Sequence record: OQ708376.1
Length of the DNA: 64,000 nucleotides
Direction: 5' to 3' (one strand)
Shown: one piece after another, positions 43,144 to 43,410 of the stretch
Layout: each line of letters opens with the position of its first letter
Numbering within the stretch: position 1 is the first letter of the stretch
The notes under the pieces: generated by a model
The model's input: only the letters and a program-made list of their open reading frames with translations
What the model was told of the DNA's origin: nothing
Database searches by the model: none
Made by a program: the position numbers and the translations under genes

Positions 43144-43410
43144 AAATGTAGACGGTCGTATTCAGTACTGAATCACTAGGGGAGGTTGTAATTCCCGAAT
43201 CAGTAGCTTAAAAGCAGACCCGTATGTGCCTACACATTACAACTAGTGCACATTTAAAACCTAGACGTAGGATGTAAGTATTCAGTTCTGAATAGCTGAA
43301 GGACTTATTATGGTACAATACAGTGAGAGGTACTTCGAGTATGCTCAGTTCACCTTTAGCTAAAATGGTCACTGTAGGATATTGTTGCAACAGTATCCAG
43401 TACTACTTTT
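43144..43410 (+). ncRNA. candidate structured ncRNA (~265 nt) within the tRNA cluster
   Basis: no credible ORF; many complementary segments; ends in GGATATTGT-TGCA-ACAGTATCC plus a T-run. Confidence 0.55.

What the first reader, a model, noticed from the sequence alone, without database searches (positions are those of the whole stretch)
43144..43410. Second structured non-coding element (~265 nt) inside the tRNA cluster, with mutually exclusive pairings
Seen: no credible ORF. AAATGT/ACATTT closes domain 1, with TGTAG/CTACA and ACGGTC/GACCCGT inside. GTTGTAAT (43185) pairs with ATTACAAC (43236) and CACTA with TAGTG, while GGGA/TCCC can form a competing hairpin (switch or pseudoknot). Further stems are TAAGT/ACTTA, TACAGTGA/TCACTGTA and a terminal GGATATTGT/ACAGTATCC plus T-run. 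Inference: a distinct ncRNA, ribozyme-like element or origin-like DNA element among the tRNA genes, where phage large ncRNAs are often found.
Basis: partly seen in the sequence, partly recalled or inferred. Interest (0 to 1): 0.72.

Follow-up and report, generated by a model that had tools for sequence, protein, structure and literature searches.

The report
Conserved structured non-coding module among phage tRNAs
A roughly 265-base stretch with no gene, sitting among the tRNA genes of a giant E. coli phage, is kept almost unchanged in every related phage and probably makes a folded RNA of unknown job. Transcription has not been shown, and only part of the fold is backed by comparative evidence.

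Summary
The window comes from an Asteriusvirus, a jumbo E. coli phage (100% identical to vB_EcoM_CRJP21).

The block is present once in each of 37 Asteriusvirus records. Its borders stay fixed while the neighbouring genes are swapped. In the most divergent relative, JNE01, it is 90.9% identical, against about 74% for the alignable surroundings. That is higher than the tRNA genes.

Evidence for an RNA fold on the + strand is real but modest:
- Folding z-score is -2.2 on the + strand and -1.0 on the - strand.
- The consensus fold keeps 9 of 11 variable pairs on the + strand and 2 of 11 on the - strand.
- Two hairpins in the 3' half show compensatory changes and keep UNCG-type loops.
- The 5' half is nearly invariant, so its fold is untested.

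The element has no Rfam, tRNA, T4 rnaC/rnaD, ribozyme or T-box match, and no homologue outside the genus. There is no replication-origin signal.

Best reading (confidence about 0.5): a two-unit structured RNA carried on the early tRNA/short-ORF transcript, comparable in position and size to T4 stable RNAs species 1 and 2.

Rival readings are DNA operator sites (AGTACT-centred palindromes), a passive terminator-promoter spacer, and a tRNA-Thr anticodon-arm mimic.

The parts
43144..43412 (+). Whole conserved non-coding module. It lies between the stop codon of the 71-aa ORF (42925-43140) and the next early promoter.
   Evidence: Searches show conservation with fixed borders. In JNE01, Turkey5, WPEC5 and ph0011 the upstream gene is different, yet similarity starts at 43137-43144.
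43149..43173 (+). Unit-1 start signature: TAGACG (43149-54), 3 nt, then GTATTCAGTACTGAAT (43158-73; 14-nt perfect palindrome at 43160-73).
   Evidence: The same signature recurs at 43262-43293.
43152..43223 (+). Helix P1: ACGG(UC) 43152-57 with (GA)C-CCGU 43217-23. It closes the core of unit 1.
   Evidence: Pair 43155/43220 changes G-C to G.U. Pair 43156/43218 is U-A in 10 sequences, U.U in 7 and A-U in 2 (JNE01, Turkey5).
43166..43205 (+). Helix P2: UACUGAAUC 43166-74 with GAAUCAGUA 43197-205. It encloses hairpin P2a and uses the 3' half of palindrome 1.
   Evidence: It is a perfect 9 bp in 15 of 19 phages. The window has an A.A mismatch at 43172/43199, and EJP2 has G.U there.
43180..43196 (+). 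Hairpin P2a: GGGAG-GUUGUAA-UUCCC, a 5-bp stem with a 7-nt loop. The loop equals positions 33-38 of the anticodon loop of the phage tRNA-Thr(UGU).
   Evidence: The stem is invariant. Loop position 43190 is A in 7 sequences and G in 12.
43224..43253 (+). Hairpin P4: AUGUGCCUA / UAG-UGCACAU with an 11-nt loop CACAUUACAAC (43233-43).
   Evidence: Pair 43224/43253 changes A-U to G.U in 8 sequences. All other pairs are invariant.
43185..43243 (+). Possible loop-loop (kissing) contact: GUUGUAAU 43185-92 with AUUACAAC 43236-43.
   Evidence: 8 of 8 positions pair in all 19 sequences, and the A-to-G change at 43190 keeps G.U; loop shuffles give P(>=7 bp) = 0.013.
43254..43259 (+). Invariant A/U-rich single-stranded linker (UUAAAA) between the two units. 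It is a candidate processing site.
   Evidence: The processing role is inferred only.
43260..43308 (+). Start of unit 2: hairpin CCUA-GACG-UAGG (43260-71), a second TAGACG (43262-67), and stem GUAAGU/ACUUAU (43274-79 with 43303-08). That stem encloses the second 16-mer GTATTCAGTTCTGAAT (43278-93) and helix UUCAGU/GCUGAA.
   Evidence: The pairs are invariant apart from two G.U-compatible one-sided changes.
43311..43405 (+). Helix UGGUAC 43311-16 with GUACUA 43400-05, closing a three-way junction. Two alternatives use the same 3' strand: GUAG 43148-51 or GUAG 43374-77 pairing with CUAC 43403-06.
   Evidence: One break is seen, in ph0011. Comparative data do not resolve the mutually exclusive partners.
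43319..43376 (+). Stem UACAGUG/CACUGUA with inner hairpin 43327-46, capped by UUCG(A), UUCG or UCCG loops.
   Evidence: Pair 43332/43340 changes A-U to G-C in A4, UE-S1, JP4 and BAU. Pair 43330/43342 changes G.U to A-U. Pair 43324/43371 changes U-A to U.G.
43377..43398 (+). Terminal hairpin GGAUAUUGU-UGCA-ACAGUAUCC (-10.5 kcal/mol).
   Evidence: Pair 43378/43397 changes G-C to A-U in JNE01 and Turkey5, is G.U in EcMJ, and is A.C in PBECO4 and SD6_S16.
43407..43412 (+). T-run, 4 to 6 T among relatives, lying 8 nt after the terminal hairpin. It is a weak terminator tail and/or an UP-like element of the next promoter.
   Evidence: The terminator scan did not call it. PMC5259590 describes UP-like elements before early RpoD-type promoters in the related phage CBB.
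43415..43442 (+). Adjacent sigma-70-type promoter TTGACA-16-TATAAT (12 of 12 matches) for the small ORFs and tRNA-Thr. This is context, not part of the RNA.
   Evidence: The -35 is invariant. The -10 is deleted in the Salmonella-host relatives.

Best explanation
The block 43144-43412 is a genus-specific, selectively maintained non-coding module. It is read on the + strand as part of the early transcription unit that carries tRNA-Ser, tRNA-Met, tRNA-Asn and three short ORFs, driven by the promoter at 41941.

The RNA probably folds into two units:
- Unit 1 (about 43146-43256) is a four-helix core in which two hairpin loops can kiss.
- Unit 2 (about 43257-43406) is a stem-loop followed by a three-way junction that ends in a 9-bp hairpin.
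- Each unit starts with the same signature, TAGACG followed a few bases later by GUAUUCAGUACUGAAU.

It most likely survives as one or two stable structured RNAs, possibly cut in the invariant A/U linker. That would make it the counterpart of the T4 stable RNAs species 2 and 1 (rnaD and rnaC), which lie at the end of the T4 tRNA cluster.

The 3' hairpin with its short U-run would act as a leaky terminator or a block to 3' exonucleases. The T-run would also serve the next promoter.

What is shown: presence, borders, conservation, absence of a conserved ORF, + strand preference, and compensatory changes in two hairpins.

What is inferred: transcription, processing, stability, and any function in trans.
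For: Conservation and borders:
- The block occurs once in each of 37 Asteriusvirus records at 90-100% identity.
- Its borders are fixed while upstream and downstream genes differ.
- Across 19 genomes it is locally the best-conserved stretch, with pairwise identity 0.88-0.996 against 0.3-0.8 in the flanks.
- Against JNE01, only 42% of 24.3 kb aligns, at 74% identity. The element aligns at 90.9%, above the tRNA genes at 82-87%.

Not protein-coding:
- No ORF is conserved.

RNA-like features:
- GC is 0.39-0.45 against 0.33 for the genome.
- Folding z-score is -2.17 on the + strand and -0.98 on the - strand.
- The + strand consensus fold gives -64.0 kcal/mol, 9 of 11 variable pairs consistent, and SCI 0.88. 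The - strand gives -50.0 kcal/mol, 2 of 11, and SCI 0.79.
- In unit 2, two pairs change on both sides, and the covariation score is 0.053 against 0.041 +/- 0.004 in shuffles, with 0 of 500 reaching the observed value.
- The inner hairpin keeps UNCG-type loops while its stem changes.
- JNE01 substitutions break 2 pairs of the window's own MFE fold, against 5.1 expected (P = 0.04).

Architecture and context:
- The start signature is repeated in both units.
- T4 carries rnaD (119 nt) and rnaC (139 nt) in tandem in its tRNA cluster, 264 nt in all.
- Contigs from two RNA-seq libraries run unbroken through the element and the T-run. This is weak evidence, because DNA carry-over is not excluded.
Against: - No direct transcript evidence exists. 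The RNA-library data are assembled contigs without strand information or local depth.
- In unit 1, 27 of 30 modelled pairs never vary and none changes on both sides, so its fold is untested.
- Folding z-scores are modest, and unit 1 alone gives only -1.3.
- With the window's own MFE fold, only 9 of 18 variable pairs stay fully consistent across all relatives, which is about chance.
- Sequence diversity is low (95% mean column identity), and no homologue exists outside the genus to test covariation.
- Conservation extends to loops and linkers. A DNA-level role would explain that equally well.
- The two palindromes belong to a genome-wide DNA motif.
- There is no sequence or structure match to T4 rnaC or rnaD.
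Confidence: 0.5

Rival explanations
1. The block is a DNA-level regulatory region. The two identical 16-bp sites GTATTCAGTACTGAAT lie 120 bp apart, and a third AGTACT lies at 43399. They would be operators for a dimeric phage or host DNA-binding protein that recognises the AGTACT-centred palindrome. Binding would cause a roadblock, looping, or early-promoter shut-off. Under this reading the surrounding conservation reflects protein-DNA contacts, not RNA.
For: - CAGTACTG occurs 25 times in the window against 0.63 expected.
- AGTACT occurs 151 times against 21.5 expected, in all three reading frames and in intergenic DNA.
- The motif sits just upstream of the -10 in 4 of 28 sigma-70-like promoters.
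- 121Q has another intergenic ATTCAGTACTGAATCACTGG, and elsewhere a cluster of four AGTACTG sites.
- The enrichment is shared by RaK2, Munch and an IMG/VR relative.
- Most relatives have perfect 14-nt palindromes at both sites.
Against: - The palindromes cover only 32 of about 265 conserved bases.
- The hairpins with compensatory changes and UNCG loops lie outside the palindromes.
- One-sided changes are G.U-compatible on the + strand only.
- Three AGTACT sites in 270 nt is only a mild excess over the genome-wide density of about 1 per 420 bp.
- No binding protein is known.
Confidence: 0.2
2. The block is a passive spacer with no function of its own. It would be a 3' UTR with a weak terminator plus the UP element of the next promoter. 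It would be conserved because it serves as a recombination joint between exchangeable early gene cassettes, in the manner of the promoter-early-stem-loop (PeSL) cassettes of T4-type phages.
For: - Mosaic breakpoints coincide with both ends of the block.
- The 3' hairpin, T-run and consensus promoter form a PeSL-like arrangement.
- The early region is dense in repeated promoter cassettes.
Against: - The block is single-copy per genome, whereas PeSLs are multi-copy.
- 265 nt is far more than a terminator and UP element need.
- 91% identity in JNE01, against 74% for the neighbours and above the tRNA genes, implies constraint along the whole length.
- The T-run itself varies in length, and the -10 is deleted in some relatives.
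Confidence: 0.15
3. Unit 1 is a tRNA-Thr-related mimic or sensor. Hairpin P2a imitates the anticodon arm of tRNA-Thr(UGU). The P4 loop carries the complementary sequence UUACAA, with the Thr codon ACA at its centre. The RNA would bind threonyl-tRNA synthetase (as the E. coli thrS operator does), bind the tRNA-Thr anticodon (as a T-box specifier loop does), or act as a decoy. Any of these could tune read-through into the tRNA-Thr gene(s) about 320 nt further downstream.
For: - P2a can be drawn as a 5-bp stem with a 7-nt loop GUUGUAA, against CUUGUAA in the phage tRNA-Thr. That gives U33, UGU, a purine at 37 and A38.
- CMSTMSU, which lacks one G of the run, allows only this register.
- A match of positions 33-38 of any phage tRNA inside a hairpin loop arose in 18 of 400 shuffles, and for tRNA-Thr in 2 of 400.
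- The loop-loop complement is 8 of 8 and conserved.
- ThrRS recognises anticodon nucleotides, and anticodon-arm mimics regulate thrS (PMC9976931). The thrS leader read holds a UCGUG loop sequence.
Against:
- There is no Rfam T-box or tRNA hit.
- The element has no overall similarity to any tRNA gene.
- The stem strands are swapped relative to the tRNA.
- A strong independent promoter lies between the element and tRNA-Thr in most phages.
- The UGGU that could pair with an ACCA end is only a 4-mer and is expected by chance.
Confidence: 0.1
4. The block is a self-cleaving ribozyme, a replication origin, or a small-protein gene.
For: In addition, some GenBank records annotate short hypothetical CDSs across the block.
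Against: - No ribozyme family matches at E <= 10.
- Cumulative GC skew rises monotonically through the region.
- ORFs are broken by frameshifts in 7 of 19 relatives.
Confidence: 0.03

Closest known systems
T4 stable RNAs species 2 and species 1 (rnaD, rnaC), function unknown
   Same: - Both are non-coding stretches of about 264-270 nt inside a virulent coliphage's tRNA gene cluster, on the same strand as the tRNAs.
- Both are organised as two consecutive units: T4 has 119 + 139 nt, and this element has about 113 + 156 nt.
- Neither encodes a protein.
   Different: - The element has no sequence or structure similarity to the T4 RNAs. Covariance models R1 and R2 find nothing in the T4 tRNA region.
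- T4 rnaC ends in a canonical T-arm-like CCGGGTTCGAATCCCGG and rnaD ends in CACCA. This element has no T-loop or CCA-like end.
- The T4 RNAs abut tRNA-Arg. This element is separated from the tRNAs by short ORFs.
- Processing and stability are shown for T4 (established knowledge) and unknown here.
E. coli thrS mRNA operator (tRNA-Thr anticodon-arm mimicry)
   Same: Both include a hairpin with a 5-bp stem and a 7-nt loop presenting U33-N-G35-U36-purine37, the anticodon determinants read by ThrRS (PMC9976931).
   Different: - This element is not a 5' UTR that overlaps a ribosome-binding site.
- Only one mimic hairpin is seen.
- Its loop is complementary to another loop of the same RNA.
- No binding data exist.
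T-box leader RNAs
   Same: - Size is about 250 nt.
- Both have a codon-bearing loop complementary to a tRNA anticodon.
- Both have alternative pairings next to a U-run.
- Both are linked to tRNA biology.
   Different: - There is no Rfam T-box hit even at E <= 10.
- I found no conserved T-box sequence, K-turn or stem I platform.
- The host clade is not known to use T-boxes (my own knowledge).
- The downstream genes have their own promoter.
PeSL (promoter-early stem-loop) cassettes of T4-type phages
   Same: - Both have a stem-loop directly upstream of an early sigma-70 promoter.
- Both lie in a hyperplastic region of short ORFs.
- In both, mosaic joints fall at the edges of the element.
   Different: - This element is single-copy.
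- It is about five times longer.
- It is internally structured and conserved along its whole length.
Large phage-associated ncRNAs found near tRNA genes (GOLLD, ROOL)
   Same: Both are structured non-coding RNA candidates in a phage genome next to tRNA genes.
   Different: - There is no Rfam match.
- This element is much shorter, about 265 nt against roughly 500-800 nt (my own knowledge).
- It is restricted to one phage genus.

Membership tests
Any Rfam 15 family (including ribozymes, T-box, tRNA, tmRNA, 6S, GOLLD, ROOL, Y RNA-like) | Covariance-model score at or near the family's gathering threshold | tested here: not met
   (gathering thresholds) finds only the tRNAs. (E <= 10 over 42900-43750) gives a single noise hit, snoR35, at 14 bits, and it lies upstream of the element.
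tRNA or degenerate tRNA | Cloverleaf with a T-loop, and similarity to tRNA genes | tested here: not met
   ARAGORN and RF00005 find nothing in 43141-43412. Local alignments to all 7 phage tRNA genes are no better than shuffles.
T4-type stable RNAs (rnaC, rnaD) | Location inside the tRNA cluster on the tRNA strand | tested here: met
   The element lies between tRNA-Asn (42153-42225) and tRNA-Thr (43735-43808), and all of these are on the + strand.
T4-type stable RNAs (rnaC, rnaD) | Sequence or structure homology to rnaC or rnaD | tested here: not met
   Models R1 and R2, run with filters off on the T4 tRNA region, give best E-values of 1.3 and 0.2 at unrelated places.
T4-type stable RNAs (rnaC, rnaD) | Accumulates as a discrete, stable, processed RNA species | not testable with these tools
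   Only assembled contigs of RNA libraries were available. They give no ends, strand or local depth.
Intrinsic (Rho-independent) terminator | G+C-rich hairpin followed within 0-2 nt by a U-run | tested here: inconclusive
   - The scan did not call it.
- The hairpin is -10.5 kcal/mol and is separated from the T-run by 8 nt.
- The T-run is 4-6 nt among relatives.
- An extended stem, GUAG 43374-77 with CUAC 43403-06, would abut the U-run.
thrS-operator-like anticodon-arm mimic | Hairpin with a 5-bp stem and a 7-nt loop showing U33, a Thr anticodon NGU and a purine at 37 | tested here: met
   GGGAG-GUUGUAA-UUCCC at 43180-96. Position 37 is A or G among relatives.
thrS-operator-like anticodon-arm mimic | Binds ThrRS and controls translation at an overlapping ribosome-binding site | not testable with these tools
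No ORF start lies adjacent to the hairpin.
PeSL recombination cassette | Multi-copy promoter plus stem-loop repeat flanking exchangeable ORFs | tested here: not met
   There is one place per record in all 37 genomes. No second copy exists in the 64-kb window.
Replication origin | GC-skew inflection, iterons or an AT-rich unwinding element | tested here: not met
   Cumulative GC skew is monotonic. The element is richer in GC than the genome. No direct-repeat array was found.

The most novel reading that the evidence does not exclude
Unit 1 is an RNA that imitates the tRNA-Thr(UGU) anticodon arm and masks it with a codon-bearing loop of the same RNA. Under this reading, a jumbo phage would use it to bind host threonyl-tRNA synthetase, the tRNA-Thr anticodon, or an anticodon-directed defence nuclease. 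It might also set read-through into its own tRNA-Thr gene(s). That would be a phage-encoded tRNA mimic or sensor of a kind not described before.
Probability: 0.1. Interest if true: 0.8.

Novelty: new member of a known kind. Interest (0 to 1): 0.45.

Why it matters
Jumbo phages of the RaK2/PBECO4 group are used as therapy candidates, yet more than 80% of their genome is unexplained. Their early regions are annotated only as short hypothetical ORFs.

This block is unannotated, or mis-annotated as small CDSs, in all the records I inspected. It is nevertheless one of the most constrained sequences of the hypervariable early tRNA region. If it is a stable RNA, it gives Asteriusvirus a counterpart of the T4 species 1 and 2 RNAs, whose function is still unknown after 50 years. 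It would also offer a second, independent system in which to study them.

If the anticodon-arm resemblance is real, it would link phage tRNA clusters to mimicry of the host translation or defence machinery.

The practical consequence is that annotators should mask 43144-43412 as non-coding.

Tried and rejected
- **Rfam.** Searches at gathering thresholds and at E <= 10 found nothing.
- **Homologues outside the genus.**
  - blastn against 50,697 phage records found only Asteriusvirus.
  - Exact-seed scans of IMG/VR found only 121Q.
  - The metagenome scan gave 16 hits, of which 15 were chance 18-mers and one was an Asteriusvirus contig.
  - The GTDB genome scan gave 5 chance hits inside coding sequence.
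  - E. coli genomes gave no match.
- **Syntenic loci of sister phages.** Munch, 7t3, fENko-Kae01 and an IMG/VR 360-kb contig have no gap or covariance-model hit at the corresponding place. Two gaps of about 268 nt in the IMG/VR contig are unrelated.
- **T4 rnaC and rnaD.** No homology.
- **Internal duplication.** The two halves share only the 16-mer and TAGACG.
- **Similarity to tRNA genes.** None.
- **RNA-seq.** The four runs I laid on the region were available only as assembled contigs, which cannot show transcription, ends or strand.
- **Neighbouring proteins.** They match only PHROGs of unknown function and no Pfam family.
- **Literature.** Papers on Asteriusvirus, phAPEC6, fEgEco12 and Sharanji do not mention the element.
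- **Palindrome search in IMG/VR.** Searching for ATTCAGTACTGAAT returned mostly chance hits.
Rejected, because it is broken in 9 of 19 sequences.
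Full report
**Identity of the window and context**

The 351 bases around the finding are 100% identical to Escherichia phage vB_EcoM_CRJP21. They are 90-100% identical to 36 further records of the jumbo-phage genus Asteriusvirus (PBECO4, 121Q, G17, phAPEC6 and others), with one place per record.

The finding lies in an early-type region of short + strand ORFs interleaved with seven tRNA genes. The 64-kb window holds 28 sigma-70-like promoters. The related phage CBB has the same organisation, with RpoD-like promoters preceded by UP-like elements in a region of short ORFs (PMC5259590).

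The element starts right after the stop codon of a 71-aa ORF (42925-43140). It ends at a T-run (43407-12). A perfect TTGACA-16-TATAAT promoter follows immediately (43415-42). That promoter drives two tiny ORFs and tRNA-Thr (43735-43808).

**Checking the observation**

No ORF is credible. The only long one, 60 aa on the - strand, is split or lost in 7 of 19 relatives by single-base indels.

The folding signal is moderate:
- The whole + strand folds at -70.7 kcal/mol, z = -2.17, with 2 of 200 shuffles as good. The - strand gives z = -0.98.
- Taken separately, the 5' unit gives z = -1.3 and the 3' unit gives -2.0 (-2.4 for the A4 allele). Both - strand halves give about -0.8 to -1.0.

**Conservation**

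I aligned 19 copies: the window, 17 GenBank phages and one metagenome contig. Mean column identity is 95%, and one run of about 100 bases is nearly invariant.

The borders are sharp. In JNE01, Turkey5, WPEC5 and ph0011 the upstream gene is a different one, yet similarity begins at 43137-43144. Downstream, similarity ends in or just after the promoter. The Salmonella-host relatives carry a 117-bp deletion that removes the -10 and the first small ORF.

Across the 19 genomes the block has pairwise identity 0.88-0.996, against 0.3-0.8 for the 400 bases on either side.

The most telling comparison is with JNE01. Of a 24.3-kb syntenic stretch, only 42% aligns to the window, at a length-weighted 74% identity. 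The element aligns at 90.9%, the best segment of the region and above the tRNA genes at 82-87%. Against the close relative 121Q the block is not exceptional (93-100%). The argument therefore rests on the divergent lineages and on retention of the block.

**RNA structure**

The RNAalifold consensus has 75 pairs, and I named its helices as follows.

Unit 1:
- P1: ACGG with CCGU.
- P2: UACUGAAUC with GAAUCAGUA.
- P2a: the GGGAG...UUCCC hairpin.
- P3: a weak GCUU/AAGC hairpin.
- P4: AUGUGCCUA with UAG-UGCACAU.

Unit 2:
- A CCUA/UAGG hairpin.
- GUAAGU with ACUUAU, enclosing UUCAGU with GCUGAA.
- A junction formed by UACAGUG with CACUGUA, an inner UNCG-capped hairpin, and the terminal 9-bp hairpin.
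- The junction is closed by UGGUAC with GUACUA or, alternatively, by GUAG with CUAC.

Formal counts:
- In unit 1, 27 of 30 pairs never vary. Three vary on one side only, all G.U-compatible, and none changes on both sides. Its fold is therefore untested rather than supported.
- In unit 2, two pairs change on both sides. Pair 43332/43340 goes from A-U to G-C in A4, UE-S1, JP4 and BAU. Pair 43378/43397 goes from G-C to A-U in JNE01 and Turkey5.
- The unit 2 covariation score is 0.053, against 0.041 +/- 0.004 in shuffles (0 of 500 reach it), and 99.6% of cells are paired.
- The inner hairpin switches between UUCGA, UUCG and UCCG loops while three stem pairs change. This behaviour is typical of RNA.

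A further pair just outside the model, 43156/43218, is U-A in 10 sequences, U.U in 7 and A-U in 2.

A fair strand comparison favours the + strand. The + strand consensus fold gives -64.0 kcal/mol, 9 of 11 variable pairs consistent and SCI 0.88. The - strand gives -50.0 kcal/mol, 2 of 11 and SCI 0.79.

Tests that do not use a fold optimised on the alignment are weaker:
- With the window's own MFE fold, only 9 of 18 variable pairs stay consistent in all relatives.
- The 17 JNE01 substitutions break 2 pairs against 5.1 expected (P = 0.04).

Overall, the RNA fold is supported for the 3' hairpins, is plausible for the rest, and lies on the tRNA strand.

- CACTA/TAGTG is broken in 9 of 19 sequences.
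- GTTGTAAT and ATTACAAC are not rivals of the GGGA/TCCC hairpin. They sit in the loops of P2a and P4. They are complementary over 8 bases in all 19 sequences, and the A-to-G change at 43190 keeps a G.U pair. Shuffling the two loops gives 7 or more base pairs in 1.3% of trials. This suggests a kissing-loop contact but does not prove one.
- Truly exclusive pairings do exist elsewhere. Each palindrome has a third partner segment, and three different segments can pair with GUACUAC (43400-06) next to the U-run. The data do not say which of these form.

**Two-unit architecture and the nearest analogue**

Both halves begin with the same signature: an A-rich stretch, TAGACG, 3 to 10 bases, then GTATTCAGT(A/T)CTGAAT. 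The signatures lie at 43149-73 and 43262-93. Otherwise the halves are unrelated. This divides the block into units of about 113 and 156 nt, joined by an invariant UUAAAA linker.

T4 carries rnaD (119 nt) and rnaC (139 nt) in tandem in its tRNA cluster, on the tRNA strand, 264 nt in all. The parallel is one of position and size only. My covariance models find nothing in T4. The T4 RNAs have tRNA-like 3' ends that this element lacks.

**The 3' end**

The terminal hairpin (-10.5 kcal/mol) lies 8 nt before a T-run that varies from 4 to 6 T. The terminator scan did not call it. A clear terminator elsewhere in the region, at 45107-45160, has its U-run 2 nt after an 11-bp stem.

In two RNA-seq libraries, contigs run unbroken from the upstream ORFs through the element, T-run and promoter to about 43620-33. 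Their k-mer depth is 3 to 5 times that of the neighbouring contigs. This fits read-through transcription, but contigs cannot exclude DNA carry-over.

I therefore read the 3' end as a leaky terminator or a protective structure. The T-run also sits where an UP element of the next promoter would be.

**The DNA-level rival**

- The 14-nt palindrome ATTCAGTACTGAAT is an extended form of a motif that pervades the genome.
- CAGTACTG occurs 25 times against 0.63 expected.
- AGTACT occurs 151 times against 21.5 expected, in all three reading frames (61, 25 and 44 sites) and in intergenic DNA.
- Four of the 28 promoters carry AGTACTG just upstream of the -10.
- 121Q has the palindrome, followed by CACTGG and a GC hairpin, at another intergenic site, and elsewhere a cluster of four AGTACTG sites.
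- The enrichment is shared by RaK2 (72 against 3.7 expected in 11 kb), an IMG/VR relative (61 against 6.7) and Munch (16 against 2.8).

A protein that binds this motif could act at the element. However, the palindromes cover only 32 of the roughly 265 conserved bases, and the RNA-type evidence lies elsewhere. I give this reading 0.2. It is not exclusive of an RNA function.

**A lead worth testing**

P2a can be drawn as a 5-bp stem with a 7-nt loop, GGGAG-GUUGUAA-UUCCC. CMSTMSU, which lacks one G, allows only this register. The loop matches positions 33-38 (U33, UGU, A37, A38) of the anticodon loop CUUGUAA of the phage tRNA-Thr gene about 540 nt downstream. The P4 loop holds the exact complement, UUACAA, with the Thr codon ACA in the middle.

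In mononucleotide shuffles of the element, a hairpin loop contained positions 33-38 of any of the seven phage tRNAs in 18 of 400 trials, and those of tRNA-Thr in 2 of 400. E. coli ThrRS reads anticodon nucleotides, and its own mRNA operator uses anticodon-arm mimics (PMC9976931; the leader was read).

This observation is post hoc. There is no T-box or tRNA model hit and no overall similarity to tRNA genes. A strong promoter separates the element from tRNA-Thr in most phages. I rate this reading at about 0.1.

**Other exclusions**

- No Rfam family matches, including all self-cleaving ribozymes.
- Cumulative GC skew shows no inflection, and there is no iteron array.
- There is no similarity to E. 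coli genomes.
- There is no homologue in sister genera at the syntenic place.
- The neighbouring proteins are of unknown function.
- None of the Asteriusvirus papers I searched mentions the element. Some GenBank records annotate spurious short CDSs across it.

**Verdict**

The element is real, discrete and under selection, and it is most likely a structured RNA on the tRNA strand. It is a new, genus-restricted member of the loosely defined class of stable RNAs embedded in phage tRNA clusters.

Its function and even its transcription remain to be shown. Only the 3' hairpins have comparative structural support. Interest is moderate at 0.45, and would be higher if the tRNA-Thr mimicry proves real.

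Noticed in passing
Whole window; also loci L052 and L059 (RaK2), L040 (IMG/VR 360-kb contig) and L013 (Munch): The palindrome AGTACT is 7-fold over-represented (151 against 21.5 expected) and CAGTACTG about 40-fold (25 against 0.63). The sites occur in all three reading frames and in intergenic DNA. Many other 6-bp palindromes are absent from the window. The enrichment is shared across the RaK2/Munch/Asteriusvirus group (for example 72 against 3.7 in 11 kb of RaK2). This points to a clade-wide DNA-level signal of unknown function.
   Followed up: partly
Window 41463-41490, 41872-41901, 41941-41969, 58438-58465, 62752-62779: A subclass of early sigma-70-type promoters shares the cassette TTGACT-AAATAGTTCAGTACTG-TATAAT, or close variants. 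AGTACTG lies immediately upstream of the -10. Three copies lie within 500 bp in the tRNA cluster.
   Followed up: partly
Window 39679-39858, 39919-40113, 40438-40638, 41127-41291, 41288-41452: A family of paralogous ORFs of 54-66 aa, each containing the motif MTH(E/K)EWM, is interleaved with the tRNA genes. There are at least five copies.
   Followed up: no
Window 43668-43726: A conserved 12-bp hairpin (z = -2.8) lies directly upstream of tRNA-Thr. Positions 43660-43689 are 96% identical across 19 genomes, more than the tRNA itself in that alignment.
   Followed up: partly
Window 43426-43544: A 117-bp deletion allele is present in the Salmonella-host relatives (SD-6_S16 and others) and in one sequencing run. 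It removes the -10 of the 43415 promoter and the 38-aa ORF. In those phages the next ORF and tRNA-Thr must therefore be transcribed through the element.
   Followed up: partly
Window 45094-45327: This is another non-coding gap of about 235 nt. It has a strong terminator-like hairpin (45107-45153, z = -5.1, followed by a U-run) whose loop holds CAGTACTG. It also has a second GC hairpin with a T-run at about 45283-45309.
   Followed up: no
L040 15797-15889: In a 360-kb IMG/VR relative, an RNA candidate of about 95 nt is driven by its own promoter. It has a canonical T-arm (GAAGGTTCGACTCCTTC) and a CCA end, but neither ARAGORN nor the Rfam tRNA model calls it. It may be an aberrant tRNA or a tRNA-like RNA.
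   Followed up: partly
GenBank records of JP4, BAU.Micro_ELP-22, SD-6_S16, WPEC5, fEgEco12, EJP2, JNE01 and Turkey5 (loci L033, L035, L010, L007, L036, L006, L004, L005): Short hypothetical CDSs are annotated across the element, on either strand. They are not conserved between relatives and are probably spurious.
   Followed up: yes
Loci L004, L005, L034 and L160: Gene content in the tRNA cluster varies within the genus. JNE01, Turkey5 and BF17 carry two tandem tRNA-Thr genes. JNE01 also has tRNA-Leu, a second tRNA-Met and an HNH homing endonuclease in the cluster. WPEC5 and vB_Ec-M-J carry an HNH endonuclease downstream of the element, and in vB_Ec-M-J it lies just after tRNA-Thr.
   Followed up: no
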